A stretch of 64,000 bases of DNA, taken from the NCBI RefSeq assembly GCF_902713615.1, contig NW_024056011.1:186001-250000 (forward strand), in the 5' to 3' direction. The notes beneath the pieces are model-generated. The model did not search any database, was not told where the DNA came from, and saw only the letters and a list, made by a program, of their open reading frames with translations. This DNA comes from Scyliorhinus canicula (lineage: Eukaryota). This document shows positions 4,070 through 64,000 of this stretch, piece after piece. The position numbers and the translations under genes are program-made. Each line of letters starts with the position of its first letter. The first letter of the stretch is position 1.

Positions 4070-4500
4070 TCTAAGTTTAATTTATCAATCCCCTTTAGGA
4101 TTTTAAATACCTCGAAGAGATTCTGAACTCCAGTGAGTATAAGCCCAAACTGTTTGATCTCTCCTCATATGTCAACCCTTTCATCCCTGGAATCAATCTG
4201 GTGAACCTCCTGTGAACTGCCTCCAAGGACACCACATCCTTCCTGAAATAAGGAGACAAAACTGGACACAATACTCCAGCTGTGCTCTCTCCAACATCCT
4301 GTACAATTGCAACAACACTTCTGTACTTTTATACTCCAATCCTTTTACAATAAACACAAACATTCCATTTATCTTTTTAATTACATGCTGTACCTGCATA
4401 CTGACTTTGTACGATTCATGCACAAAGGCGCTCAGGTCCCGCTGCCCAGTCGCATATTGAATCTGCTTTCCTTTTAAATAATAATTTGCTTACCTATTTT
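4070..4500 (-). mobile_element. CR1-clade LINE ORF2 3' fragment
   Basis: ORF 4193-4423 (KKINGMFVFIVKGLEYKSTEVLLQLYRMLERAQLEYCVQF) matches the CR1 RT C-terminal motif also seen at 7826-8107 and 39415-39798. Confidence 0.8.
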
Positions 4501-4555
4501 GTCGGGCAAAATGGATATCCTCACATTTATCGCTGGATCAAATCCCGGGAACACG

Positions 4556-5505
4556 CTCACTTACAACAGTATGGGTGTACCTCACTTACAACAGTATGGG
4601 TGTACCTCACTTACAACTGTATGGGTGTACCTCACTTACAACAGTATGGGTGTACCTCACTTACAACTATATGGGTGTACCTCACTTACAACACTATGGG
4701 TGTACCTCACTTACAACAGTATGGGTATACCTCACTTACAACAGTATGGGTGTACCTCACTTACAATGGTATAGGTGTACCTCACTTACAACAGTATGGG
4801 TGTACCTCACTTACAACTATATGGGTGTACCTCACTTACAACACTACGGGTGTACCTCACTTACAACAGAATGGGTGTACCTCACTTACAACTGTATGGG
4901 TATACCTCACTTACAACACTATGGGTGTACCTCACTTACAACAGAATGGGTGTACCTCACTTACAACTGTATGGGTGTACCTCACTTACAACACTATGGG
5001 TGTACCTCGCATACAACAGTATGGGTGTACCTCACTTACAACAGTATGGGTGTACCTCACTTACAACACTATGGGTGTACCTCACTTACAACAGAATGGG
5101 TGTACCTCACTTACAACTGTATGGGTATACCTCACTTACAACACTATGGGTGTACCTCGCATACAACAGTATGGGTGTACCTCACTTACAACTGTATGGG
5201 TGTACCTCACTTACAACACTATGGGTGTACCTCACTTACAACAGAATGGGTGTACCTCACTTACAACTGTATGGGTGTACCTCACTTACAACACTATGGG
5301 TGTACCTCGCATACAATAGTATGGGTGTACCTCACTTACAACAGTATGGGTGTACCTCACTTACAACAGTATGGATGTACCTCACTTACAACAGTATGGG
5401 TGTACCTCACTTACAACAGTATGGTGTACCTCACTTACAACTGTATGGGTGTACCTCACTTACAACAGTATGGGTGTACCTCACTTACAACAGTATGGGT
5501 ATACC
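4556..5505. repeat. 25-bp minisatellite, ~38 copies (ATGGGTGTACCTCACTTACAACAGT)
   Basis: Direct head-to-tail repeats with variants CAGT/CTGT/CACT/CAGA and CGCATACAA; no spacers; explains the long repetitive ORFs 4486-5626. Confidence 0.97.
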
Positions 5506-5651
5506 TATACACATGGAATGCAGTGGTTCAAGGAGGAAGTTCACCACCACCTTCTCAAAGGCAGGTAGAAATGGGCAACGATGTTCATTGTCATTAACCA
5601 CTTTTTATAAAGCACACAATCTGTAACCATTCCGACCATGAAACCATGAAC

Positions 5652-10516: not shown

Positions 10517-10849
10517 ATGGTCCGAGTTTACAGAGTCTCTTTGCTGTTTTTCACTCTGATCTGCACCATTGAGACTGGAGAAGATCCGCTGCTGCAGCTC
10601 CCTCGGCGGATGGGTGTTCATGAAGCGGGAATCGTGTCCATAAACTGCACCAGCACCACTTTGATGAACACCGTGCGTTGGTACAGGCAGCAGCCAAATC
10701 AGCCACCCCAGCATCTAGTGCTGGCCACAAGAGAAACCGATCAACACGGGAGGGTCACTGCCTCAATCGGGGGAGAAAGCAAACTCAGTGTCCTGACTGT
10801 GAGAGAAGCCCGAGTTACCGACACTGCCGCCTATCTCTGCGCCGTGAGG
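10517..10849 (+). CDS. TCR alpha/delta-type V segment, single exon (leader fused to V, no intron)
   Basis: MVRVYRVSLLFFTLICTIETG-EDPLLQ...SINC...WYRQQPNQPP...DTAAYLCAVR; continuous ORF with conserved C, W and YxC, followed directly by an RSS. Confidence 0.92.
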
Positions 10850-10888
10850 CACAGTATCACAAGTAGATGGAGAGCTCGTACAGAAACC
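10850..10888 (+). other. 23-RSS
   Basis: CACAGTA + 23 nt + ACAGAAACC. Confidence 0.92.
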
Positions 10889-11815
10889 TACACTGAGTGG
10901 GAGCACTGCTCTACTGAGCTCGGAGAATCGGCGGTGTGATTGGCGCAGTAATAATATTACAAGTACCGGGGAATGAGTGAAAAAGCTCGAAAAACAAGTG
11001 GGAAAGATTTAAATCGGATCAGAGTTGAAGAACGTTGGAAATAGACAGGGATAAATGAGGAACAAACAGGCGAACGAGATTACGTGCGTGATCAAGGGAA
11101 AACTAAAAATACAGGAATCGCACAGAACATATAACCAAAATACTGTGAAAAATAAATGAAATAATGTGAAAAACTAATGAACGTCAGTAACAGAGGTTAA
11201 AGATTATATCGTCATAACTGAAAATAAGGTTACATTTCCTCCTTTTCAACAAAATTCACATTCCCGTGATAGTTTGACAGTTTAATTCTCCGATAATGTT
11301 TCCTAATAATTGGTCCTTGGATATTGCAGCACGGGTAAATGAACAGTTTTCTCCTTGTTCTGCAACATTCTTTACCATCCTGCCCCAACTCCAATGGTCC
11401 CGTGTTCCTCCCTGTTACCTTGAGAAATGTGTTCATTTTCTGCGAACCGTGACTAAGCCAGCAACATACTGTGAGCAAAAGGACACGATGCACCGGTTGT
11501 GGTCAAACGGACCCAGAAACGGAATGTGAAAATGAAGAAAGGGCTGCACATTCATTCAAACAATTGGCAATGCATCCGGACAAGTTGGAACGCGAGTGAA
11601 CGCACCATGAATTAATTTATTCAATTAATTTCAGCATGGATGCTGGTTGGAAGTTATTAATATAAGACTTCAGTTCCTGCTCAATTGTTTTTGTTTAGTG
11701 TTGTGTTTTGTTGATTTATTAATTGCTCTCTGACTCCCCACAGGCTGTGGACTTGTTTCTGTCTATCAGTGCGAGGGCGCCCTCTGCTGAGCAATAACTG
11801 GAACTGTCAGTGTGG

Positions 11816-11853
11816 GGTTTTTGTACGGCACCCGCTATATCTGCAGCAGTGTG
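11816..11853 (-). other. RSS, 22-nt spacer
   Basis: Minus strand CACACTG + 22 nt + ACAAAAACC. Confidence 0.92.
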
Positions 11854-12274
11854 GGCTCCATGGCACAGAAATACACTGCGCTGTCGGAGGGAAGCGCCCT
11901 GGCGATATTTAAAGGGACTGTTTTGTTTCCTTTGTGTAAAACGGCAGAAAATCTTTCTGATAAACCTTGAGACGTACTTCCCGAGCTATATATCGTGAAT
12001 AAATATTTGGGAGCTTTCCCGGGAGACTGGATGTACCAGAACAGATTTCGATTACCAGCTGCCGAGTAACTGCAGTCCAATGTTACGGACTGTCCTTCCA
12101 GAACGGTTAATTCAGGTGGATTCTGCGACACTGCATCGTTGCCATTGGTTCCTGCAACAAATTACAGAATCTGTTAAATATCTGGTGGCGAATCTTGGCG
12201 ACAGACACTGACTATTTAAACAGAAACTCACCAGGTAGCAAGAACAGAATTAGTAAAGAACATTGGGAGAACAT
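11854..12274 (-). CDS. Intact TCR alpha/delta-type V gene (leader 12232-12274, V exon 11854-12151)
   Basis: Leader MFSQCSLLILFLLP + G|GTGAGT, 80-nt intron, TTGCAG| acceptor; GTNGNDAVSQNPPELTVLEGQSVTLDC...LFWYIQSPGKAPKY...DSAVYFCAME. Confidence 0.95.
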
Positions 12275-12380
12275 GCCAGCTGCTTCAAAAATATATCAAC
12301 ACATCCACTCCGACATGAAAAAGTAAACTCAGTTCATTGTCAGACTTTATTTATTGAGAAGCAAATGGGCGTTGTCCAAT

Positions 12381-12710
12381 GGCATGATTGGTTGGTCTCT
12401 CGGTGCTGTCGGCATGATTGGTTGGTCTCTCGGTGCTGTCGGCATGATTGGCTGGTCTCTCAGTGCTGTCGGTATGATTGGCTGGTCTCTCAGTGCTGTT
12501 GGTATGATTGGCTGGTCTCTCAGTGCTGTCGGCATGATTGGCTGGTCTCTCAGTGCTGTCGGTATGATTGGCTGGTCTCTCAGTGCTGTTGGTATGATTG
12601 GCTAGTCTCTCAGTGCTGTCGGCATGATTGGCTGGTCTCTCAGTGCTGTCGGCATGGTTGGCTGCTCTCTCAGTACTGTCGGTATGATTGGCTGGTCTCT
12701 CAGTGCTGTC
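12381..12710. repeat. 30-bp minisatellite, ~11 copies (GGCATGATTGGCTGGTCTCTCAGTGCTGTC)
   Basis: Direct repeats; most units carry RRCCAATCA on the minus strand; lies ~110-440 nt upstream of the V leader at 12274. Confidence 0.97.
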
Positions 12711-12879
12711 AGCAATTGGGCACCAATCAATGTTAGTTGTAGCCCAATGACATTTTCTCTCCCCCTCTGTCTGTCTTTTATTGTATCTCCGGCTCTCTGT
12801 TGGTCCCTCTGTCTGTTTGGCTCCTTTCAATCTTTAGGATTGTCTGTGAGCCAATCTCCGCTTTCCGCGTGTCGGAGCC

Positions 12880-13826: not shown

Positions 13827-14312
13827 ATGCAAAAACAGCTCACACTGATCCTCATCATTATATCATTTCTCAGTAAGTATTTATTTTCCTGCAAAAAATA
13901 TCCTCCCCAAGATCTCTAACCAAGTTACCGTTCTGATGAAATAATGATAGTCATGTTCATTGAGATGATGACACTGACCATGATGATAATAGTTATGGTT
14001 TTCTGTCATACTGGATCCACGAAGCAGCAGTGGAACAACCGATCCGTGAAATGGCGGTGAGAGAGGAAAGTAATGTCACACTAACCTGCACCATGAAAGG
14101 AAGTGATCGTCGAAGTTATATGTTCTGGTACCGTCAACACTTTGGACAAACCCCACAGTATGTCATTCGTATTATAGGAGAGAAAGTGAGAAGACAACCC
14201 GACATCAGTAATCGCTTCTCTTCGATGTTCGACATGAGTAGCAAGATTACAGAGCTAAGGGTCAGCAGTGCAATGATCTCTGACTCTGCGGTGTATCTCT
14301 GTGCACTGAACC
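13827..14312 (+). CDS. TCR V gene, family A (open V frame; canonical acceptor mutated, probable alternative acceptor)
   Basis: Leader 13827-13872 MQKQLTLILIIISFL + A|GTAAGT; V reads VEQPIREMAVREESNVTLTC...FWYRQ...DSAVYLCALN. The position homologous to the paralogs' acceptor reads GTCAT instead of GTCAG; in-frame AGs at 14023-24, 14026-27 and 14029-30. Confidence 0.8.
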
Positions 14313-14352
14313 CACAGTGGTTCAAAGATAGAGCAGGTCCTGTACAAAAACT
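14313..14352 (+). other. RSS, 24-nt spacer
   Basis: CACAGTG + 24 nt + ACAAAAACT. Confidence 0.85.
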
Positions 14353-15533: not shown

Positions 15534-16038
15534 ATGAGGAACCATCTCGCTTCGCTCATCATCGTTATCTCACTTCTAAGTAAGTATTTCCTTCCCAGCA
15601 ACACTCCATTGTCTTCCTGACGGCTGTAACCCAGATGTTATTGTTGGTAAAACGACAGAGATTATGTTGTTGATGATTTTATTGTTTAATATGAGGCTGA
15701 CTCTGATTGTCATTATCGCTGTAACTTCCGTTAGAATAGAGCCACCAAGACTCCGTGGAGCAAAAGGAATCTGAAATAACGGTTACAGAGGAAAGTGAAG
15801 TCACATTAACCTGCACCTTGAAAACAAGTTCTCCTAACCCTTTTGTGTACTGGTACAGTCAGCAGCCCGAGAAAGCTCCAAGCTACATGCTTCGAGTTAT
15901 TGGGCTGATTGTGGAAAGGAACACCGAACTCACCGATCGATTTTCTTCTACGTTTGATAAAAGGAACAAGACTACCGAGCTAAGGATGAGTAACACAATG
16001 ATCTCCGACAGCGCCGTGTATTTCTGTGCCGTGAAGCC
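15534..16038 (+). pseudogene. TCR V gene, family A, with TAG right after the first acceptor (probable pseudogene or alt-spliced)
   Basis: Leader 15534-15579 MRNHLASLIIVISLL + A|GTAAGT. CCGTTAG|AA TAG gives a stop at 15737-39 (paralogs have TGG/TGC). The rest of the V is open: DSVEQKESEITVTEESEVTLTC...YWYSQQPEKAP...DSAVYFCAVK. Confidence 0.8.
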
Positions 16039-16078
16039 CACACTGCTGCCGAGATATGTTGGAACCCGTACAAAAACC
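16039..16078 (+). other. RSS, 24-nt spacer
   Basis: CACACTG + 24 nt + ACAAAAACC. Confidence 0.88.
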
Positions 16079-17627
16079 CCACACTGGCAGTTCCACCCAC
16101 TGCTCAGCAGGGGGTGCGCCCTCATCGATAGTTCCGTTTCCATAGTGACAGTGACACAAATTGTAACAACACACAAAACTAAAAAGCATCAGTAGTGAGG
16201 CCCACCTGCACAGTTATACCAGTTTGCGATTGCAACTCGCATTCAGAACAGTAAAAAAAAACTTAAAGTACCCAATTATTTTTTTCCAATTAAGGGGCAA
16301 TTTAGCATGGTCAATCCACCTACCCTGTACATCTTTGGGTTGTGGAGGCGAAACCCACGCAAACATGGGGAGAATGTGCAAATTCCACACGGACAGTGAC
16401 CCAGAGCCGGGATCAAACCTGGGACCTCGGCGCCATGAGGCATAACATATGTAAGACTAATGAATGGATCTTCGATACCTTAACTCCTGCTTCTTGTTCT
16501 TATCTTGGAGTGCAAACTCACCCTCTCAGCAAACTATCAGGTGTCACTGAACTACAATAAATACAGCAACTTCGATTCATGTCGAGCTTTTCGCACAATA
16601 AACTGTCCCGAGGGGTTTTACAGGAACTATGGACATATTCAGTCATATGATCAAAAGCTTGGTCAACGAGATTGGTAAGAAGGAGAGTCTTAAAGGAACA
16701 CTGACTGCTCATCCAGAGTGTACAGAATTATGAGGGACATGGATAGAGTAGATAGGAAGAAACTTTCCCCGTAGTAATGGTGTCAATAACCAATTGGCAC
16801 AGATTAAAGGTAAGGAATTGGAGATTTCGAGGGGCTTTGTGGGAGAACGTTTTCACCCAGACGGTGGTGGGAACTCACAGCCTTCATCTCCGATTTCAAT
16901 CACTCCACCATCGCTGGCCGTGCCTTCACCTGCCTGGACACAACGCTCTGGAATTTCCTGCCTAGATCTTTCCACTCTTCCACTTAGAGTCAGAGCCAAA
17001 GAGCTTTACAGCGCAAAATGAGACCCTTTGCCCAGTGTGCATGCGCTGGCCATCGAACACCTTTCTATTCTCATTTAATATTCCAGCAGTTGGTCCGTAG
17101 GCTTTTATGCTATGGCATTCGAAGTGCTCATCTAAATGTTTCTTCAATGTTGTGAGGTTTTCTGCCTCTATGACCCTTTCACGCATTCAGCCCCAGATTC
17201 CCATCACCCTCTGGGTCAAAATGGTTTCCTCAAATATCCTCTAAATCCGCCCCTTAACGTAAATCTATTCCCCCTGGTTATTCACCCTTCTACTAAATGG
17301 AAAAGTTCCTTCCTATCGACCCAATCAACGCCACTCATCATTTTCTGACATAAAAATCAACAATAAGGAAGACAGAGTCTAAACAGCTGCAATGTAGATT
17401 TCTGGGACTCATTTGTGGCTTGGTCTGTATTTCGGTAAACCCACAATCAACTCAACATCCGTATTGACGAAGAGCCACCGATATTCCAAACGTTAGCTCC
17501 CTACTCTCTCCATAGGTGCTGTCAGAACTGTTGAGATTGTCCAGTTTTTCAGATTCTAGCAATAATTTGCTTTTATTTATATTATCGATTGACAAATCGA
17601 TTTTGATTCAAGCCTGAACCCGGCATC

Positions 17628-18175: not shown

Positions 18176-18214
18176 GGTTTTTGTACGGTGCTCTAGCTGC
18201 TATCTAACGGTATG
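18176..18214 (-). other. Inactivated 23-RSS
   Basis: Minus strand CATACCG (essential CAC lost) + 23 nt + ACAAAAACC. Confidence 0.8.
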
Positions 18215-18868
18215 CCTCACTGCACAGTAATAGACCGCCCCGTCCTCCACACTGAGGGAGCCTATATTGCGGTAACCGTTCTGTTCAGACTTGTCAGCAG
18301 CCGTCAGATATCGTCCTGAAACTGCACCGTTCTTCAACGCGTGCTGTTTAGCACAGGGCTAAATCGCTGGATTTGAAAGCAGACTAAGGCAGGCTAGCAG
18401 CACTGTTCGATTCCCGTAACAGTCTCCCCGAACAGGCGCCGGAATGTGACGATGAGGGGCTTGTCACAGTAACTTCATTTGAAGCCGACTCTTGACAATA
18501 AGCCATTACAATTTTCATAGTGATAATCCATCTCGGTGGTTGTGCCGGTTTCTGCTGATGCCACAGCATGCCGTACATACTCTTGTCTGTATGTTCACAA
18601 TTCAAACGCACCGAATCCCCTTCTGATGAGGTTATTGTTACCGGTAACTAAGTTACTGGATCTGCGCATAGCCCGCCTGTGAAGGTAGAGGATTAAATAT
18701 CAAGTGTTGATGTAAATTTGCCTGTATCTGAAAGAGTTTGTGAAACCTCCTAATTGCACTTCATATAGATGTTTTCGATCATAATTATATTGCCATCGAT
18801 GTGTAATAACATGTTAATTTGCCTCGATGTTTATTGTGCCACAGCGCCGCCATTATTATCAGATACTT
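18215..18868 (-). pseudogene. TCR V pseudogene, family C (paralog of 22006-22520)
   Basis: V exon from 18676: GLCADPVT*LP (TAG at 18648-50), SINE in CDR2, ends DGAVYYCAVR; leader ATG changed to AAG and donor lost. Confidence 0.9.
18340..18518 (+). mobile_element. Short SINE inserted antisense into a V CDR2
   Basis: Matches 25125-25297; interrupts the alignment with the V at 22006 between WII and GAVSGRY. Confidence 0.85.
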
Positions 18869-21900: not shown

Positions 21901-21966
21901 GGATTAAACAATTCCCGCAAACAGCGGCAGCAAAGCCCATTTAGTGGCGCTGTAAATACTCGCTGA

Positions 21967-22005
21967 GGTTTTTGTACGGTGCTCTAGCTGCTCTCTAACG
22001 CTGTG
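21967..22005 (-). other. 23-RSS
   Basis: Minus strand CACAGCG + 23 nt + ACAAAAACC. Confidence 0.93.
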
Positions 22006-22520
22006 CCTCATTGCACAGTAATAGACCGCCCCGTCATCCACACTGAGAGCGCTTATATTGAGGTAACCGTTCTGTTTAGACTTGTCAGCAGCCACCAGAT
22101 ATCGTCCTGACACTGCATCATCCTTCAGATCTACAAATTTGCTAATAATCCAGATTGGTGGCTGTGCCGCTTTCTGCTGATACCATTGCATGGACTGCAT
22201 AGCGGAGTCTGTATATTCACAATCCAGCCGCACCGAACCCCCTTCTGATTCGGTTTTTGTCACCGGTGATTGAGTTACTGGATCTGCGCTTAGTCCGCCT
22301 GCGAAGGGAGATAAATGAAATATCGATCAGTTAAACGTAATTCACCTACATTTTTTTGTATATCTGTGAGTTTCTGGAAACTCAACTCTACTCATCATGT
22401 GGATATTTCTGATCGTTAATTATATTCAATGTTATTGCAATCTATAACCCGCTAATATGGCTTGATGAACATCATCCATTACTTACCGTCCAACAATACC
22501 GCCAGTATTAACAGAAACAT
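22006..22520 (-). CDS. Intact TCR alpha/delta-type V gene, family C (leader 22487-22520, V exon 22006-22298)
   Basis: MFLLILAVLLD + G|GTAAGT; TTCGCAG|GC GGA; LSADPVTQSPVTKTESEGGSVRLDC...MQWYQQKAAQPP...DDGAVYYCAMR. Confidence 0.95.
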
Positions 22521-27601: not shown

Positions 27602-28113
27602 NNNNNNNNNNNNNNNNNNNNNNNNNNNNNNNNNNNNNNNNNNNNNNNNNNNNNNNNNNNNNNNNNNNNNNNNNNNNNNNNNNNNNNNNNNNNNNNNNNN
27701 NNNNNNNNNNNNNNNNNNNNNNNNNNNNNNNNNNNNNNNNNNNNNNNNNNNNNNNNNNNNNNNNNNNNNNNNNNNNNNNNNNNNNNNNNNNNNNNNNNNN
27801 NNNNNNNNNNNNNNNNNNNNNNNNNNNNNNNNNNNNNNNNNNNNNNNNNNNNNNNNNNNNNNNNNNNNNNNNNNNNNNNNNNNNNNNNNNNNNNNNNNNN
27901 NNNNNNNNNNNNNNNNNNNNNNNNNNNNNNNNNNNNNNNNNNNNNNNNNNNNNNNNNNNNNNNNNCCACTCCCCNNNNNNNNNNNNNNNNNNNNNNNNNN
28001 NNNNNNNNNNNNNNNNNNNNNNNNNNNNNNNNNNNNNNNNNNNNNNNNNNNNNNNNNNNNNNNNNNNNNNNNNNNNNNNNNNNNNNNNNNNNNNNNNNNN
28101 NNNNNNNNNNNNN
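27602..28113. other. Assembly gap or masked N run with a 9-nt island (27966-27974)
   Basis: N bases; the left edge is inside a SINE. Confidence 0.99.
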
Positions 28114-31599: not shown

Positions 31600-31758
31600 A
31601 GGTCTGGCGATGGAGATTCTGTGACTCAGCGGAATCCTCACTGACACAGACAGAAGGAGAGATGTCACTTCAATCAGTACCTATACCGACGATGCTTATT
31701 ATTTATTCTGGGACCGTCAATACCCAGACAGGACTGCCTGAGTTTGCGGTCCGGAAGG
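31600..31758 (+). pseudogene. TCR V pseudogene 5' half, truncated by a repeat insertion
   Basis: GDGDSVTQ / LTQTEGE / YTDDAYYLFWDRQYPDRT / PEFAVRK in shifting frames; typical TCR alpha/delta FR1-FR2. Confidence 0.75.
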
Positions 31759-36514: not shown

Positions 36515-37252
36515 ATCAGCACCAGGTTCATCCACCTGAACGAACTATTTCTCTCTGAAAATGCGACCCGCCGAGTAACATATTGAGCAGCACTTCTGCT
36601 TCTGAGCTGTTTGACCTGGGTATAATTCTACTCCAGGATTTGTTGACCATGGGAGGACTGTTTGTGCAACTGAACCAGGTTTATTGATCAGCCTCCATAA
36701 AATCCTTCGACTTCCCCGCACCTTCCTCCGAGGTGGAAATAATTTGAATGTGCGAAAAACAAACGAATTTTCCATCCGATTTCTGATCTGTTGAGTCTTT
36801 CCAGCAGGCGTCTGTGTTTATTTTAGATTTCTAGTATATGTGGTCAGTTACCTTTGTTCTAATGTAATGGGAACTGCGGACAGATCTTGTCGGCATCAAG
36901 TCATGGTGGTACACTTAACCTCTGAGTCAGAAAATTGTGGGTGCAAGTCCAAGTCCGGAGCCTCGACCATATAATGCGGATCAATTCTCACCGTGATAGT
37001 TTAGATGAAACTCCTTGGTGCCCATTGTCCATTATTCCATAAACTTCAGATCCATAGGTGAAGGACAGACAAACACTGATCAGTATCTGCATTCACCGAA
37101 GTGCGGGTTACTGGCACAACAATGATGCTTGACGTCATTTCCCCCCTCCCCCACACCATTTGTAAATAACGAACAAATATTTCCATTAATGATGAAGTGA
37201 TTTACAACTGCCTGGCCCGGAGTCATGCAACGGCCCCAGTACAATTATCATC

Positions 37253-37825
37253 AGAGACTGGCTCCAGTGTATGAATAACAGAGACTGCCGGGCCCGGGGT
37301 CAGACTGGGGTCAGGTATAATAATAATCACAGAGACCGGCTCCAGTGTATCAATAACAGAGACTGCCGGGCCCGGGGTCAGGCTGGGGTCTGGTATAATA
37401 ATAATCACAGAGACCGGCTCCAGTGTATCAATAACAGAGACTGCAGGGCCCGGGGTCAGACTGGGGTCTGGTTTAATAATAATCACAGAGACCGGCTCCA
37501 GTGTATCAATAACAGAGCCTGCCGGGCCCGGGGTCAGACTGGGTTCTGGCATAATAATAATCAGAGACCGGCTCCAGTGTATCAGTAACAGAGACTGCCC
37601 GGCCCGGGGTCAGACTGGGGTCTGGTATATAAATAATCACAGAGACCGGCTCCAGTGTATCAATAATAGGCACCACAGGACCTGGGGTCAGACTGGGGGC
37701 TCGTATAATGATAATCAGAGACCGGCTCCAGTGTATCAATAATAGGCACCACAGGACCTGGGGTCAGACTGGGGGCTCGTATAATGATAATCAGAGACAG
37801 GCTCCAGTGTATCAATAACAGAGTC
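37253..37825. repeat. 76-78-bp minisatellite, ~7.5 copies
   Basis: AGAGACCGGCTCCAGTGTATCAATAA... unit starts at 37253, 37331, 37409, 37487, 37563, 37641, 37717 and 37793. Confidence 0.96.
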
Positions 37826-38444
37826 TGTTTCTAATCTGTTGCATTTTAACCTGGTGTTGCAGGACTTCTTACTGTGCCCACCCCGGTCGAAATCTGGCAC
37901 TTCCACATCAACCTGATGTGCAGGTAAGCAGGGTGCCGAATTTTATGAAGTGGAACTGTGAGAAAGCAATGACGCTCCGGGCCTTGACTCGATCTTCCGT
38001 GCATTAGAAAGGATTGGAAACATCAACGAGAGAGGCGCGTGGGACTGACTCCATCTGGGATCTTTAATACCCAAGGGGAGGACCATCATGGCGGACTCCA
38101 GAGGTTCCTGATATCTGTGGTGATAATGGTGCATCTGCCACGGGAATTCTTATCATTCTTCCCATCAGTTCTCCATCTACACAGTCACGCAAGACCCGGT
38201 TCCAGAATCTTCTGGAAACCAATGTTTCAAAATCAGATTGGGGTGCAAACTTTAAAAGTCACAACCACATCACAGGAAGAATTAGTGCCACAAATGTTCA
38301 AGATAATTTTGCTTTTTCAAAGCAAGTTCTATCCAGTGTTACTTTGTTCACAGAAGTGGATTGTAAACAGTGACGGACTTCTGAAAGAGTCCTGACAATT
38401 ATTGATATACACCATGGATATCAATAGATAGGATTAGCACACTA

Positions 38445-42590: not shown

Positions 42591-45500
42591 ACAGCACGTC
42601 TTTGGGGAAATGTGGGAGGAAACCCATGAAAGTGAATTAAACGAGACCAAGGAGAATGAGCAGCTACTCAGCAGCCTCTGCATTATATTGGCAAATAATC
42701 AAAAAAACAGACATAAAACTGGAGAGTGTAATGATTCTTAAAGTGACGCTCGAAAATTCCTGCATATAATATGAAGTTAATGAATCTTTGAATCCCGATT
42801 TTTGTATTACACTATTTTGGAAAGCAATTCAAAATTTGCAGCTGTCCACTGAGTTTCGCAGTAGATCTGCCATCACATTAATATGCTTTAGCCTGTTACC
42901 TTCACTAATTTGGGTGAGGACATGTCGAGTGATTTGTTGCAAATGGAATGACCACATGTTCCAAATATTATAACCGTCCCTCCTCGACGTTAGCATGTTC
43001 CCGCTTTCTGCCTTTGATATGAAGATTCACCATCAGCAGAGAAAAATCATCAGGAATACCTCTAATCTGCTCTTGATGACCTCCAGCTCTTTAGTTCCCG
43101 ATAGTCTCTGGTTGGAATTCATCCAGAAAATCTCGAAGGACCGAATGTATCAGTCTGACACAAGTTATAAAGGACCTGCTTTAATTTATGACGTAGTCAA
43201 GCACAAAAATTTAAATGTGGAACAGGATCTTTTAGGTCCATCTCTGGAAACATTCATCAATCCATTCACTGATTCCTCAATCAAAACATTTCAGGCATCC
43301 AACTATCATTCATCTCTGCATCAACGCAGTAATCCCTTTATTTTTCGACAGATGGTAGCGTCGTATTAATGTCATTGGATAAGGAATCCAACGGCCCGAG
43401 CTTATTCTGTGGGACCTCGGGCACAAATCCCATCATGCTTGGTGGTGGAATTTGAATTCAGTTCATAAATCTGGAATGCACACTAACCGTGACCATGAAG
43501 TCCCCGCTGCTTTACTGGTGAAGGAAACATGATATCCCTCCCTTGTCTACACGGGACTCCAGTCAGCCAGCAACATGTCTGAGTTCTAGAGTAATTAGGA
43601 GTAGGGAAGACATGGTGGTCTTTCCAGTGAGAACCACATTCCACGGAAGAATAAATGGAAAACATATAATTAGACATGTTTATCTGTTCCAAAATGTACT
43701 CTGTCTGATAGTCTGTTTGTATTTCTACCCACATGAGATATTGGGAGATCCTTAAGCCTGCTATTGTTGATAAGAGGGGCATGAAAAGCTGGATAACTCT
43801 CCTTTCTTTAGAGATGGGAACAGTTCACATAGGTTCACAAATTAAAACATTAAATGATCTCCAGTACTGTTGCTGGGTAGATTTGTTTATAAATAGTCCT
43901 CATTGACAATGTTACGAGTTTGAAGTTGGCTTGCAGCCAAGCGGTCAGTACTGAGGAAACAGATCAATGAAAAAAATCCAGATGCTTCCTGTAAACAACA
44001 TTGAACATTCGAGCCTCCCTGACTGCAGGCGGCTGGATTGCTGCCAAATACTGTGTGGGGCAGATTAACCTGAATATGAATGGATTAAATGGGATTGATC
44101 CATTCAAACAATAAATGTTTCAGTCGCGCATGAAGTAAACGTTTTACATGGTGTTCCATCTAAGTAAATAATTTTCAGTGAATGTTTTGTTCACTCTCAG
44201 CTTAAACCCGATCGGAAAATAGGAAACTGACGCGATGTTATTTAATTTATATTAGTTCTGAGTAAAGGGCACTATAGTTATTAAAGTCCGTTTGTTAAGA
44301 AGCTAATAAAGTGAGAGTGAGTGGTGTTGATGGACACAATGCACAAGCCGTACAAGATGAATACAATTGCGAAAAAGGAAATTTAAAAAATAATAATGAA
44401 AATGCCTTGAAGCTGCCGGAATTCCTGGGACATTATCCGAGTTGTTCGCTTCGTTTAAACGGAGGAGCCTCTTATACCCGATTAGCACTGTGCAGTTTAA
44501 TTTTTGCTGATTGCCATGATTTAACAGTCCCTCTCATTGCTGCCAACGAGTGGAGAATTGACCAGTTCATAACCTGCTTCAGTGTAAGTTAAAATATTTA
44601 TTCTTGTGATATTGTGTAATATGCCGCAAAGTCCTGATATCCTGTGTTACCAACACGAGTGAATGTTAGACAACCGGTGGGCCAATAAAATTAGCGGCAA
44701 CGATTTGGATGCTGAAGGATAATTTTGCTGATCGCAGTGTCCGTTCCGATTCATTAACTTCTTTGTCAAATGTTAATGTCAATTTAATGTTTCTCTGTCA
44801 ACTCACTGTTGAATTATCAGGCAAGCGGCTTCTTTTACCGCTAATGTTTACAGGACTGTCTGAGGCTCAGCGGCAAAATGTGAGAAGAAACAAACATTGA
44901 ACATACAGTGGAGGAGGAGGCCATTCGGCCCATCGAGTCTGCACCGACCCATTTAAGCCCTAATTCCACCCTATCCGCTTAACCCTACGTAATGCGTAAT
45001 TTTGGTCACTAAGGGAAATTTATCATGGCCACTCACCAAATCTCCACGTCTTTGAACTGTGGGAGGAAACCGGAGCACCCTGAGGAAACCCGCGCAGACC
45101 CAGGGAGAACGTAAAGACTCCGTACAAACAGTGACCCAGCGAGGAATCGAACTTGGGACCCTGGTGCTGTGAAACCACAGTGCTATCCCCTTGTGTAATA
45201 AACTAAATTATGTAGTGCTTGTCATCCACATTGTAAATAGAAGCACTTTGTTCATCCTTGGCATTTAGTTACCTAAATCGATATCAAGTCCTCTGATAGA
45301 TAATACGTTATTGTTGTTTTGGGGTAAAGACGCTTGCAAATCAGACTGACAGGGTATTTTTCCCGTGTTCATGTATTGTTTAATCCTTTATGTTAATTCC
45401 CCTGAGAATAACAGAAATTAAGGGATTTGATTTAAAACATTTTTTTCTACAATTAACAGATTCTCAATTTCTTTTTGCCACAAGAATAAATGGAGACATC

Positions 45501-45639
45501 ACAATGAATACATTCAGACAACCAACTATCCGATACAGATAAATGTTAATTTTAATAATAACCTACAGTAAATCTCTGGGTCCATTCTGTTGGGGGTGTG
45601 GAAGGTGGGACGTGGATCCAGTCGCCGCCTCCAACAGGG

Positions 45640-45780
45640 AATCAACAGGCGGCGCCTGGAAAGCCGCCCCCTTCTGCCGGGTATTTAAATGCCGCTCACT
45701 GGGACCCGAATCCAACAGTCCGGGAGCTGGTTTGTTCACTGACTTCCTGACACAATAATTTCCCCCAAGTGACCAGAAGG
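45640..45780 (+). promoter_or_regulatory. VH promoter region (TATA-like TATTTAAAT at 45682-45690; CTCF-like motif at 45643-45656)
   Basis: TATA-like element ~90 nt upstream of the ATG. I saw no perfect ATGCAAAT octamer nearby, consistent with shark VH promoters. Confidence 0.55.
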
Positions 45781-46323
45781 ATGAGGTGGGCCATTTCTCT
45801 CAGTTCGTTGCTGACTTTCTTATCCCGTGAGTAGTTTTTATTGTCCAAGTCTCTCACTGTTACTGTCTCAGTGTTAGTCTCTCTCTGGAATGTCCCACAG
45901 TCACCAATCATTTCACCAGCATTAATCCTCGGGCTTTTTGATATATTTTTACAGGTGTCCAGTCGGATGTTGTGTTGACTCAGCCAGAGGCAGAGACCGG
46001 GCGTCCCGGAGGCTCCCTGAGACTGACCTGTAAAACCAGCGGCTTCAGTCTTGGCAGCTACTTCATGTACTGGGTCCGCCAGGCTCCCGGACAGGGGCTG
46101 GAGTGGCTGGTTTGGTACGGTAGTTCATCCAGCAACTATGCCCCAGCAATCAAGGATCGATTTACTGCGTCCAAAGACACGTCAAATAACATCTTCTCAT
46201 TGCTTATGACGAGCATGGAGACCGAAGACACCGCCATCTATTACTGTGCAGGGTACATGTATCAGGGGCTGGGCCACACCATCGGCTACTGGGGACAAGG
46301 CACCATGGTGACGGTGACTGCAG
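45781..46323 (+). CDS. IGHV: Germline-joined immunoglobulin heavy-chain VDJ, shark IgM-type (leader 45781-45826, VDJ exon 45955-46323)
   Basis: [15 protein letters not shown] + C|GTGAGT, 128-nt intron, TTTACAG|GT; [53 protein letters not shown]...[20 protein letters not shown]...[33 protein letters not shown] + G|GTAAAA; fully open, no RSS. Confidence 0.97.
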
Positions 46324-46591
46324 GTAAAACCATTCAATTATTTACTCACAGTTTTACTTCAGAATTTGTTCTTTTTTTTCTATTTTAACGATTAATCCGT
46401 TCACTGGTATGTCGGTTTGGTGGATTCTGTTTTGAAATTTTGTTCCAATTTTTATGTGATTCTGCTGAAAAAGGTTATCGAATTACTCTGTCTCATGACA
46501 ATAGGTTCTGCTGAGGGATTTAGTCCCTATTTGTTGTGATTGAATGAGTATTTTCTGAGGATACAATGTGGCTGGGTTACTTTAAATATCT

Positions 46592-49500
46592 TTTTTTTAA
46601 AATAATTTTTATTGAAAAATGTTGATTTTATACAACATTGACGCACCTCAGTAAAATACCGAAAATAACAATAATATTAACAATCATATACATTCGCCCC
46701 ACCTCCATGAACAACACAGCATTTTAACAACAACGCAAATTAACACACTATAAAGTTACAGAATAAACACTACAATAATGCACCCCCCCCCACCCCCCCC
46801 CCCCCCCCCCCCCACCCCCCCGGGTTGCTGCTGCTATTGACCAAGATACCTATCTCTGAGCCAGGAAGTCCAGAAAAGGCTGGCATCGTTTATAGAACCC
46901 TTGTATTGATCCTCTCAGGGAAAATTTGACCTTTTCCAATTTTATAAATCCCGCCATGTCACTGATCCAGGTCTCCACACTTGGGGGCCTCGCATCCTTC
47001 CATTGTAACAGAATCCTTCAACCGGCTACTAGGGACGCAAAGGCCAGGACACCGGCCTCTTTCGCCTCCTGCACTCCCGGCTCTACCGCAACTCCAAAAG
47101 TTGCGAGTCCACACCCTGGTTTGACCCTGGATCCAACCACCCTCGACACCGTCCCCGCCACCCCCTTCCAGAATTCTTCCAGTGCTGGGCATGCCCAGAA
47201 CATATGGGCGTGGTTCGCTGGACTCCCCGAACATCTGGTGCACCTGTCCTCACCCCCAAAGAACCTACTCATCCTAGTCCCGGACATGTGGGCCCGGTGC
47301 AGCACCTTAAATTGGATGAGGCTAAGCCTCGCACACGAGGAGGAAGAGTTGACTCTCTCCAAGGCATCCGCCCAAGTCCCGTCCTCTATCTGCTCCCCGA
47401 GTTCCTCCTCCCATTTAGCCTTCAGCTCCTCCACTGACGACTCCTCCACCTCCTGCATTACCTTATAGATGCCAGACTCCTTCCCCTCTCCTACCCACAC
47501 CCCCGAAAGCAATCTGTCCATCGTCCCCTGCGAGGGCAGCAAAGGGAATCCCTCTACCTGTCGCCTAGCAAACGCCTTTACCTGCAGGTATCTGAACATG
47601 TTCCCTTGGGGAAGGCCAAATTTATCTTCCAGTTCCCCAAGGCCCGCAAACCTCCCGCCAATAAACAGGTCCCTCAATTTGCTGATGCCCGCCCTTTGCC
47701 AGCCCCTGAATCCCCATCCGTGTTCCCCAGGATGAACCTATAGTTGCCACCCAGTGGAGCCTCCATCGAGCCCCCTGTTTCCCCCCCGATGCCGTCTCCA
47801 CTGTCCCCAGATTATTAGGGTCGCCACCACCACCAGTCTTGTGGTAAACCTCTTAGGGGAGAGCGGCAACGGTGCCATTACCATGGCACCCAGGCTCGCA
47901 CCTCTACATGACGCCATCTCCATTCTTTTCCACGCTGCCCCTCCCCCCTCCATCACCCATTTACGCACCATTGACACATTGGCTGCTCAATAGCACCCCA
48001 GAAGGTTGGGCAGCGCCAGCCCGCCTCTATCCCTCCCTCGCTCCAGGAACACCCTCTTCACTCTCGGAGTCCCATGTGCCCACACAAAGCTCAGAATACT
48101 GTTGGTCACTCTCCTAAAGAAGGCCCTGGGGATAAATATGGGAAGGCACTTAAGAAGGAACAAGAACCTCGGAAGCACCGTCATTTTGACGGACTGTACC
48201 CTCCCCGCCAACGACAATGGAAGCATGTCCCACCTCCTGAACTCCTCCTCCATCTGATCTACCAGTCTGGTGAAGTTATGCTTGTGAAGAGTCCCCCAGT
48301 CCCTGGCCACCTGCACCCCCAGGTACCTAAAGCTCTCCCCTGCCCGCCTAAGCGGGAGCCTACCAATTCCTTCCTCCTGGTCTCCAGGGTGCACCACAAA
48401 CACCTCGTTCTTGCCTAACTTTAATTTATAACCTGAAAAGGTCCCAAACTCGGCTAGCAACTCCATCACTCCTGGCATCCCTCCCACCGGGTCCGCCACA
48501 TACTGTAACAGGTCGTTGGCATACAACGACACCCTATGTTCCTCTCCACCTCGCACCAAGCCTCTCCACCTCTCTGAATCTCTCAACGCCATCGCCAGCG
48601 GCTCGACTACCAGTGAAAACAACAAGGGGGACAGAGAGCAACCCTGCCTGGTCCCTCGGTAAAGCCAGAAGTACTCCGACCTCCTCCTATTCGTGGCCAC
48701 GCACGCCATCGGGGCCTCATATAGCAGCCTTACCCATCTAATGAACCCTTCACCAAATCCAAACCTCCCCAACACCTCCCATAAGTACCCCCACTCCACT
48801 CTATCGAAGGCCTTCTCCGGATCCAGCGCCACCACTATCTCTGCCTCCCCCTCAATCGCCGGCATCATGATGACATTCAACAATCTCCGCACATTCGTGT
48901 TCAGCTGCCGTCACTTCACAAAACCTGTCTGGTCCTCGTGTACAACCCTTGGCACACAGTCCTCTATCCTGGTGGCCAGGATTTTTGCCAGCACCTTAGC
49001 GTCCACGTTGAGGAGAGATATGGGCCTGTATGAACCACACTGCTGGGGGTCCTTGTCGTTCTTTAAAATTAACGAGATCAGCGCCCGCGGCTTCGTCAGG
49101 GGCAAAGTCCCCCCTTCCCACGCTTCGTTGAGTGTCTGCACCAGCAAGGGGCCCACTAGGTCCACAAACTTTTTATAAAATTCCACCGGGAACCAATCCG
49201 GCCCCGGTGCCTTCCCTGACTGCATCTGCCCGATCCCGTTGACTAGCTCCTCCAGCTCAATCGGCGCACCCAGCCCCGCCACCTTCTCCTCCTGCACCTT
49301 CGGGAAAGAAAGCCTGTCAAGGAACCTCTCCATTCCCCTCCTCTCCCCCGTTGGCTCCGACCGGTACAGTTCCCCGTAAAAGCCCTTGAAGACCTCATTC
49401 ACCTCTACCCCCTTCCGTACCACATTCCCACTCTTGTCTCTCACTCCAGCAATCTCCTTAGCTGCATCCCGCTTACGGAGCTGATGTGCCAGCATCCTAC

Positions 49501-63688: not shown

Positions 63689-64000
63689 TGATCAATGTGG
63701 AGAATCAGGACAGGATGGATGGAGAGGAAGCGGAGGAGGTGGGCGTGGTGGAGCCGAATGGAGGAGCCCCCAGCTCGGCTGTGGACAACAGGCAACAGGA
63801 AGCTGAGGCTGAGCGGAAATTCATCCAGAGAAATAGCGTCCTGAAGGGCTGAGAGTACCTGGGAATGATCACACACCGACGGTTACTCGCCCTCGCTCAT
63901 TCACTCGGCCTGACGCACCTCACTTACCCATTCTTACTCACTCACACCAATTCACTCATCATCACTCTCCCACATTCAGTCACCCACCCCCAGTAACCTA

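What the first reader, a model, noticed from the sequence alone, without database searches (positions are those of the whole stretch)
45781..46323. Intact, pre-joined IgM-type VDJ sitting at the edge of a TCR alpha/delta V array
Seen: an open leader plus a complete VH-CDR3(14 aa)-WGQG J exon with a phase-1 donor and no RSS, 14 kb from a TCR V relic (31600) on the same side of the N gap. The leader intron is retained, so it is not a retrocopy. Established: sharks have germline-joined IgH clusters, and VH segments occur inside TCR delta loci of cartilaginous fish, Xenopus, birds and platypus; to my knowledge those are unrearranged segments with RSSs. Inference: a fixed-specificity antibody VDJ embedded in or beside a TCR V array may be undescribed. 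It would be either a germline-joined IgM cluster linked to TCR alpha/delta or an invariant Ig domain used in a T-cell receptor.
Basis: partly seen in the sequence, partly recalled or inferred. Interest (0 to 1): 0.92.

Follow-up and report, generated by a model that had tools for sequence, protein, structure and literature searches.

The report
Germline-joined shark IgM VDJ gene
This is a shark antibody heavy-chain variable gene whose V, D and J pieces are already fused in the inherited DNA; it lies next to T-cell-receptor V genes, and both the fused gene type and this neighbourhood are already described in sharks.

Summary
Window 45781-46323 (+) carries a split leader, a 128-nt GT..AG leader intron and one open 369-nt exon. 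That exon reads shark IgM VH, a 14-aa CDR3, then [11 protein letters not shown], and ends in a phase-1 donor. No RSS lies inside it.

It is in the germline. In a DNA run, the contig crossing the CDR3 has the same word depth as unique flanks. The exact CDR3 also occurs in RNA contigs from two other samples. RNA stops at the J donor, and the only reported continuation reads as a C-mu1 start.

No C exon lies in the 17.7 kb downstream, which holds minus-strand LINEs. Germline-joined VDJ-CH1 gene models in two related sharks span 12 and 24 kb, so C-mu most likely lies beyond the window.

Five intact 23-RSS TCR alpha/delta-type V segments lie at 10.5-22 kb, across an N run. A weak V relic lies at 31.6 kb.

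Germline-joined shark Ig genes have long been known. Close IgM/TCR-alpha/delta linkage, with TCR-type V exons between IgH clusters, was published in 2025 (PMC12227049). This scan also noted several IgM cassettes beside TCR V arrays on other pieces of this genome. Verdict: a new member of a known kind, of low to moderate interest.

The parts
45560..45780 (+). Promoter block with a TATA-like TATTTAAA at 45682. It is shared with many paralogous IgM clusters.
   Evidence: motif. In one search, DNA-contig word depth rises from about 9 (unique) to 340-840 from about 45580 onward, so this stretch is a multi-copy family.
45781..45826 (+). Leader exon (ATG, 46 nt, phase-1 donor C|GTGAGT)
   Evidence: The leader resembles Heterodontus HV01 MRSAISLSLLLVFLSRVQS.
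45827..45954 (+). Leader intron, 128 nt, GT..AG. Its retention rules out a retrocopy.
45955..46323 (+). Fused V-D-J exon (369 nt), shark IgM-type VH, open throughout
   Evidence: reading frame; 82% to an S. torazame VH, 79% to Heterodontus HV01; V-set E=3.8e-19
46248..46289 (+). CDR3, 14 codons ([14 protein letters not shown]). 46248 to about 46281 is the V end, D-derived sequence and junctional nucleotides.
   Evidence: DNA contig 46089-46311 (X1, 1 mismatch) and RNA contigs 46223-46313 (X16) and 46222-46315 (X25), both exact.
46282..46323 (+). J-derived part (..[14 protein letters not shown] + G), followed by the phase-1 donor G|GTAAAA. It is identical to the J of an unjoined paralog but lacks that paralog's first 6 nt.
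   Evidence: loose end in X3 before 46282...CACTGTG ACTACT, then identity. This is an RSS heptamer plus the 5' end of the J of a split cluster.
46324..64000 (+). Presumed start of the J-C-mu intron. It has no Ig C exon and is filled with minus-strand LINE fragments (about 46959-50681, 54457-57930 and 59023-59793).
   Evidence: no C domain, no C-mu1; RVT_1 E=7e-19. In one search, 46360-46570 has unique depth in DNA and zero depth in RNA.
10517..10888 (+). TCR-type V with a 23-RSS (CACAGTA, 23 nt, ACAGAAACC). Leader and V read as one open frame.
11800..12131 (-). TCR alpha-like V with a 23-RSS
   Evidence: In one search the best single-domain PDB matches are TCR alpha chains.
14030..14352 (+). 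TCR alpha/delta-type V with a 23-RSS
15755..16080 (+). TCR alpha/delta-type V with a 23-RSS
   Evidence: (TCR alpha and V-delta-1 chains among the best PDB matches)
21950..22263 (-). V with a 23-RSS whose closest solved structures are VH domains (a type intermediate between TCR and Ig, or TAILV-like)
   Evidence: best matches are VH domains and nanobodies; only an unnamed S. torazame homolog, 78%
18203..18665 (-). Frameshifted pseudo-V, a paralog of the V at 22.0 kb, that still keeps its RSS nonamer
31614..31727 (+). Degenerate 5' half of a V segment; the only V-like trace on the VDJ's side of the N run
   Evidence: nhmmer E=7.5e-6. Not significant at protein level (E=5.3).
27602..28113 (.). 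Two N runs (364 and 139 N) between the intact TCR V array and the VDJ

Best explanation
This is the variable-region gene of a shark IgM heavy-chain minicluster. Its V, D segments and J were recombined in the germ line by RAG-type joining, so every cell inherits one fixed VDJ.

Proposed mechanism:
- Transcription starts at the family-type promoter about 90 bp upstream of the ATG.
- The leader intron is removed.
- The phase-1 donor after the J (46323|46324) splices to a C-mu1 exon lying more than 17.7 kb downstream, beyond the window, across an intron swollen by LINE insertions.
- The product is an IgM heavy chain with a hard-wired 14-aa CDR3. It needs no somatic rearrangement. By analogy with other germline-joined shark Ig genes, it may contribute mainly early in life.

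Its place beside TCR alpha/delta-type V segments reflects the published close interleaving of IgH miniclusters with the TCR alpha/delta locus in elasmobranchs.

Shown here: the gene anatomy, IgM VH identity, absence of RSS, the trimmed J, single-copy depth in DNA, the CDR3 in RNA, and no read-through past the donor.

Inferred: that this particular VDJ, rather than its J-sharing paralogs, is what joins C-mu1; where C-mu lies; and the timing of expression.
For: Anatomy: split leader, GT..AG intron, open V-D-J exon, phase-1 donor. No heptamer or nonamer is present, whereas the neighbouring TCR Vs have textbook 23-RSS.

Identity: the best hits are shark IgM VH, with S. torazame at 82% and Heterodontus HV01 at 79%.

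Recombination scar: the J part is identical from 46282 to the J of a split paralog whose RSS heptamer is seen in a DNA contig, but 6 nt shorter (X3 loose end).

Germline status: the X1 contig 46089-46311 crossing the CDR3 has word depth 10.1, against 8.5-8.7 and 4.95 for unique flanks. The junction words are held by three DNA runs of sample S1, by RNA run X16 (S8, 2018) and by run X25 (S17, 2020; kind not on record).

Expression: exact CDR3 contigs occur in X16 (depth 39) and X25. Both have zero depth on the unique 5' flank and on the intron after 46360, so the signal is neither DNA carry-over nor read-through.

Splice partner: the loose ends after 46323 in X16 read CGACACCGACTCCGCCCACTCTCTACAG. 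With the J's last G this gives A-TPTPPTLYS. Mustelus P0014 reads TVTA-ATPSPPTLYSLVSSC, the start of C-mu1.

Long introns are normal: germline-joined VDJ+CH1 gene models span 24 kb in S. torazame (P0025) and 12.3 kb in Mustelus asterias (P0014).

Literature: PMC4279169, PMC5192425 and PMC2193156 on germline joining by RAG in germ cells and early-life expression; PMC12227049 on IgH/TCR-alpha/delta interleaving.
Against: No C-mu exon lies within 17.7 kb.

The sequence just 3' of the J is single-copy, while the promoter-to-J block is multi-copy. The unit could therefore have been copied or cut off without its C region.

The contigs that link J to C-mu1 share only the J with this gene, and that J is common to many clusters. 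No single record joins this CDR3 to C-mu1.

In the second DNA sample (S2), only 2 of 11 junction words were found, the same share as in other species. No CDR3-spanning piece from S2 was listed. Presence in a second genome is therefore unproven, and the gene may be polymorphic.

Sample codes hide whether S1, S8 and S17 are different animals.
Confidence: 0.8

Rival explanations
1. It is an orphan or decaying VDJ. On this reading the joined exon was duplicated, or severed by LINE insertions or rearrangement, without its C-mu exons. The RNA contigs carrying the CDR3 would then come from a near-identical copy elsewhere, or from a non-productive transcript.
For: No C exon lies in 17.7 kb, and LINEs fill the region. 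Multi-copy homology stops just after the J donor. The scan noted another germline-joined VDJ inside a TCR V array on a different piece of this genome.
Against: The reading frame, splice sites and promoter are all intact. RNA with the exact CDR3 stops at the donor, with no intronic signal. DNA depth of the CDR3 contig fits one locus. J-to-CH1 spans of 12-24 kb occur in relatives.
Confidence: 0.11
2. It is an invariant Ig VDJ domain that is spliced to a TCR constant region (delta or alpha), giving a hard-wired chimeric T-cell receptor chain.
For: It lies close to TCR alpha/delta-type V segments. Sharks are reported to make IgM/IgW-V to TCR-delta trans-rearrangements (cited in PMC12227049). No C-mu is visible in the window.
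Against: Those chimeras arise by RSS-mediated joining of unrearranged VH segments, and this gene has no RSS and already carries an IgH-type J. The window holds no TCR J or C. The only continuation reported after the donor is C-mu1-like.
Confidence: 0.03
3. It is an artefact: a somatic B-cell rearrangement or a chimeric join captured by the assembly.
For: The second DNA sample does not clearly hold the junction words. An N run separates the VDJ from the intact TCR Vs.
Against: The CDR3-spanning DNA contig has the same depth as unique flanks, which means essentially all cells rather than a clone. The identical 91-94-nt junction is assembled from two runs of other samples and studies that carry no intron or flank signal, one recorded as RNA. 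Joined VDJ gene models also occur in other shark assemblies.
Confidence: 0.04
4. It is a primordial V exon that was never split, a relic from before RAG invasion.
For: A single-exon VJ-like domain with a split leader also describes the non-rearranging UrIg genes (PMC12227049).
Against: It is 78-83% identical to rearranging shark IgM VH. Its promoter, leader and intron differ at only about 10 positions over roughly 265 nt from a large paralog family. Its J equals a split paralog's J minus 6 nt, which is a recombination scar.
Confidence: 0.01

Closest known systems
Germline-joined (VDJ) IgM heavy-chain miniclusters of cartilaginous fish (horn shark, skates and others; reviewed in PMC4279169 and PMC5192425; mechanism in PMC2193156)
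   Same: IgM-type VH, split leader, V-D-J fused in frame without RSS, IgH-type J with a phase-1 donor, signs of nucleotide trimming at the J, and transcription.
   Different: The C-mu exons are not within 17.7 kb, and the presumed intron is packed with LINEs. The specific CDR3 has not been described, to my knowledge. Developmental timing was not tested.
Nurse shark IgM1gj (germline-joined VDJ, three C domains, dominant in neonates; PMC4279169, PMC5192425)
   Same: A fully pre-joined heavy-chain V region that is expressed without somatic rearrangement.
   Different: The defining features of IgM1gj could not be examined: loss of C-mu2, neonatal and epigonal expression, and pairing with a germline-joined sigma-2 light chain. 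Orthology was not tested. The sister-species runs (organism B) were not among the holders of the junction words.
The IgH/TCR-alpha/delta antigen-receptor complex of elasmobranchs (Flajnik et al. 2025, PMC12227049)
   Same: An IgM minicluster element lying tens of kb from TCR alpha/delta-type V exons, plus a V that is intermediate between TCR and Ig types (22.0 kb).
   Different: The text of that paper as held here does not say whether any of the interleaved IgM clusters is germline-joined. Its coordinate table (S1) was not available.
VH-delta / TAILV segments in TCR delta loci (nurse shark, Xenopus, birds, platypus; cited in PMC12227049)
   Same: An Ig-like V sequence in a TCR V neighbourhood.
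   Different: Those are unrearranged V segments with RSS that join TCR-delta D/J. This is a finished VDJ with an IgH J and no RSS. The V at 22.0 kb fits that category better than the VDJ does.

Membership tests
Shark germline-joined IgM heavy-chain gene | Variable region of the cartilaginous-fish IgM VH type | tested here: met
   the top hits are shark VH (E=1e-49 to 1e-42, 78-83% identity). V-set E=3.8e-19.
Shark germline-joined IgM heavy-chain gene | V, D and J contiguous and in frame in genomic DNA, with no RSS and with the leader intron retained | tested here: met
Shark germline-joined IgM heavy-chain gene | Present in germline (all cells, heritable), not a lymphocyte clone | tested here: inconclusive
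   CDR3 contig depth is 10.1 against 5-9 for unique flanks; the exact junction occurs in runs from two other samples that show no intron or flank signal. However, the second DNA sample holds only 2 of 11 junction words, and whether the samples are different animals is hidden by the codes. The evidence strongly favours germline without giving formal proof.
Shark germline-joined IgM heavy-chain gene | C-mu exons downstream in the same cluster | tested here: not met
   None lies in the 17.7 kb available. This is not met within the window only. Sequence beyond 64000 could not be read, and relatives have VDJ-to-CH1 spans of 12-24 kb.
Shark germline-joined IgM heavy-chain gene | J donor spliced to C-mu1 in mRNA | tested here: inconclusive
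   RNA loose ends after 46323 read as a C-mu1 start. They are linked only to the J, which is shared by paralogs, and not to this CDR3.
IgM1gj-type neonatal antibody | C region lacking C-mu2; predominant expression in neonates | not testable with these tools
   The C exons lie outside the window, run tissues and stages are coded, and both read-laying runs were used.
VH-delta / TAILV (Ig-like V used by TCR delta) | An unrearranged V segment with an RSS that recombines to TCR-delta D/J | tested here: not met
   There is no RSS, and the V is already joined to an IgH-type J.
Processed retrocopy of an Ig mRNA | Loss of introns, C-region sequence fused after the J, a poly(A) tract | tested here: not met
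   The leader intron is present, and the J is followed by a GT donor and intron-like unique DNA.
TCR alpha/delta V array (for the neighbours at 10.5-22 kb) | V-set exons with a 23-RSS, closest to TCR alpha/delta V | tested here: met
   (heptamer, 23 nt, nonamer ACAAAAACC). (best single-domain PDB matches are TCR alpha and V-delta-1). The V at 22.0 kb is the exception, being closest to VH.

The most novel reading that the evidence does not exclude
The pre-joined VDJ has lost its own C-mu and is used as a hard-wired V domain of another receptor, for example spliced to a TCR delta or alpha constant region downstream in the same locus. That would give an invariant Ig-V/TCR-C chain made without any rearrangement.
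Probability: 0.03. Interest if true: 0.75.

Novelty: new member of a known kind. Interest (0 to 1): 0.22.

Why it matters
A germline-joined heavy chain is an innate-like antibody with a fixed binding site. An expressed example with a known address lets one ask when it is used (embryo or neonate versus adult), what it binds and which light chain it pairs with. Its position among TCR alpha/delta-type V segments adds one concrete, sequence-level example to the recently published picture of Ig and TCR loci interleaved in elasmobranchs. It does not change that picture.

Tried and rejected
No second look was possible with raw RNA reads, nor with more runs of the second DNA sample.
- The search for C-mu found nothing: a regex for Ig domains in six frames, the RNA-derived C-mu1 start as a DNA pattern with 3 mismatches, and tblastn with CH1 of Mustelus and S. 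torazame.
- A scan for any other J (F/WGxG with a donor) found only the VDJ's own.
- The look-up of encoding contigs for three related shark genes returned gene spans but no DNA. The D segments and a split cluster could therefore not be aligned to the CDR3.
- Deiss 2019 and Criscitiello 2010 are not held. They are cited only through PMC12227049. That paper's supplementary table is also not held.
- No canonical octamer was found upstream, only a TATA-like motif.
- The species was not established. Best hits and run years suggest a catshark relative of S. torazame, but this is a guess.

Full report
**What is there**

Reading 45500-46700 and translating it gives the following gene.
- An ATG at 45781 opens a 46-nt leader exon that ends in phase 1 (C|GTGAGT).
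- A 128-nt intron ends in TTTTACAG.
- A single 369-nt exon (45955-46323) is open from [35 protein letters not shown] through [34 protein letters not shown] and EDTAIYYC.
- A 14-codon CDR3 ([14 protein letters not shown], 46248-46289) follows, then [11 protein letters not shown].
- One extra G precedes GTAAAA, the phase-1 donor that Ig J segments use to reach C exon 1.

No heptamer or nonamer lies in or next to this exon. A TATA-like TATTTAAA sits about 100 bp upstream of the ATG, and no octamer was found.

**What kind of V it is**

The domain scores E=3.8e-19 against Pfam V-set. Its best relatives are shark IgM heavy-chain V regions:
- a Scyliorhinus torazame protein at 82% identity;
- Heterodontus HV01 at 79%, with a very similar leader;
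- Chiloscyllium proteins at 70-78%;
- a Mustelus asterias protein at 75%.

Several database proteins from other sharks are themselves VDJ-joined gene models. Rhincodon P0007 ends ...CARDWGGSLHYWGQETMVTVTA. S. torazame P0025 and Mustelus P0014 run from a joined VDJ straight into CH1.

**Evidence that V(D)J-type recombination produced it**

One DNA contig of a second sample aligns from 46282 onward. It is preceded by ...CACTGTG ACTACT, an RSS heptamer followed by the 5' end of an unjoined J from a paralogous cluster (X3 loose end). The J part of this gene is therefore identical to a split paralog's J but lacks its first 6 nt, which is the usual coding-end trimming.

The promoter, leader and leader intron differ at only about ten positions over roughly 265 nt from a sequence present at 40- to 100-fold higher word depth (tables 2 and 3). 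The gene is thus a member of a large and fairly young IgM family, not an ancient unsplit exon. The retained leader intron excludes a retrocopy. This matches the mechanism proposed for shark germline-joined genes, namely RAG activity in germ cells (PMC2193156).

**Germline or somatic?**

In DNA run X1, a 223-nt contig (46089-46311, one mismatch) crosses CDR2, FR3, the CDR3 and most of the J. Its word depth is 10.1. Unique flanking contigs of the same run have 8.7, 8.5 and 4.95. A lymphocyte clone could not reach single-copy depth.

Words sampled from the junction alone (46215-46350) are held by three DNA runs of sample S1. They are also held by RNA run X16 (sample S8, 2018) and by run X25 (S17, 2020), which come from different studies. 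X25's kind is not on record, but it shows no intron or flank signal. Both X16 and X25 yield exact contigs over the CDR3 (46223-46313 and 46222-46315, no mismatches).

The weak point is the second DNA sample, S2. It holds the locus well overall (0.35-0.41 of words over 801 bp) and gives exact contigs on both sides (45998-46113 and 46314-46569). It holds only 2 of 11 junction words, the same share as other species. Its depth is about half that of S1, so this may be dropout or a real polymorphism. Polymorphic presence of joined genes has been studied in sharks (PMC2193156 has a section on it). I rate germline origin at about 0.9.

**Expression and splice partner**

In X16 and X25 the unique 5' flank (45220-45759) and the intron after 46360 have zero depth, while the CDR3 contig has depth 39 in X16. 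The signal is therefore RNA that ends at the J donor, not DNA carry-over or read-through.

The loose ends reported after 46323 in X16 (three contigs, agreement 0.97) read CGACACCGACTCCGCCCACTCTCTACAG. With the J's last G this gives A-TPTPPTLYS. Mustelus P0014 reads TVTA-ATPSPPTLYSLVSSC at the same place, the start of C-mu1.

These contigs overlap this gene only in the J, which many clusters share. The assembler breaks the graph at 46313-46315 for that reason. The link between this CDR3 and C-mu1 is therefore inferred, not shown.

**The missing constant region**

Nothing Ig-C-like lies in 46324-64000:
- no C..W..C domain in any frame;
- no match to the RNA-derived C-mu1 start;
- no tblastn hit to shark CH1;
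- no second J anywhere.

The stretch holds minus-strand LINE fragments with reverse-transcriptase domains. These also explain the strong negative GC skew.

Joined VDJ-CH1 gene models in S. torazame and Mustelus span 24 kb and 12.3 kb. A C-mu1 just beyond the window is therefore the simplest reading.

One caution remains. The multi-copy homology block runs only from about 45560 to just past the donor, and the DNA after it is single-copy. This would also fit a VDJ unit copied without its C region.

**Neighbourhood**

Five intact V-set exons lie at 10.5 (+), 11.9 (-), 14.1 (+), 15.8 (+) and 22.0 (-) kb. Each has a heptamer, a 23-nt spacer and an ACAAAAACC-type nonamer. Pseudo-V segments lie at 18.2-18.7 and 25.9 kb.
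- The Vs at 11.9 and 15.8 kb are closest to TCR alpha and V-delta-1 chains among solved structures.
- The V at 22.0 kb is closest to VH domains.

All of these lie beyond the N run at 27602-28113. On the VDJ's side, only a degenerate half-V at 31614-31727 is detectable, and only with a DNA profile (E=7.5e-6; protein E=5.3).

**Comparison with what is known**

Partly or fully germline-joined IgH and IgL clusters are a long-known peculiarity of cartilaginous fish. [quoted passage not shown] IgM1gj of the nurse shark is the best-studied heavy chain of this kind (PMC4279169, PMC5192425, PMC2193156).

Flajnik et al. 2025 (PMC12227049) made three relevant points:
- Some TCR-alpha/delta-type V exons lie between the IgH clusters.
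- Some V domains are intermediate between TCR and Ig types.

The window shows all three of these features. This scan's own notes list many IgM cassettes next to TCR V arrays on other pieces of this genome, including another joined VDJ inside a TCR V array (unchecked leads).

The text I could read does not explicitly state that one of the TCR-adjacent IgM clusters is germline-joined and expressed, as this one is. That is a combination of two known facts, not a new kind of thing.

**Verdict**

This is a new member of a known kind. Confidence is 0.8 that it is a functional germline-joined IgM VDJ whose C-mu lies beyond the window. Interest is 0.22.

Noticed in passing
window 21950-22263 (-) and 18203-18665 (-): A V segment with a canonical 23-RSS whose closest solved structures are antibody VH domains rather than TCR V. 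A frameshifted paralog lies 3.5 kb away. It may be a TAILV/VH-delta-like or 'intermediate' V of the kind mentioned in PMC12227049. Only unnamed S. torazame homologs were found.
   Followed up: partly
window 10517-10888 (+): The leader and V of this TCR-type V read as one uninterrupted open frame, with no leader intron. It is followed by a 23-RSS with an imperfect heptamer (CACAGTA) and nonamer (ACAGAAACC).
   Followed up: no
window 10.5-22 kb: The TCR V segments alternate in orientation (+, -, +, +, -, -). Some would have to rearrange by inversion if they all use one D/J/C region.
   Followed up: no
window 45560-46340 versus its flanks: Word depth in two DNA samples is 40- to 200-fold higher over the stretch from promoter to J than over unique flanks. 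The drop to single copy comes right after the J donor. The duplication or homogenisation unit of this IgM family seems to be the V(D)J unit, not the whole cluster.
   Followed up: partly
window 46215-46350; runs of sample S2: The second DNA sample holds the locus but few junction words. The joined allele may be polymorphic in the population, or the contigs may simply drop out at low depth.
   Followed up: partly
window 4486-5626 (+), 12263-12830, 37243-37827, 63237-63687: Long tandem arrays lie here: units of about 75 bp that read as long open frames, about 30 bp, 78 bp (7.6 copies, 90% matches) and 65 bp (7 copies, 95% matches). They are probably satellites or TE-internal repeats.
   Followed up: no
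window 44860-45220: A short interspersed repeat present at extreme depth (word depth up to 1.3 million in DNA runs, and also high in RNA runs) lies 600-900 bp upstream of the VDJ.
   Followed up: no
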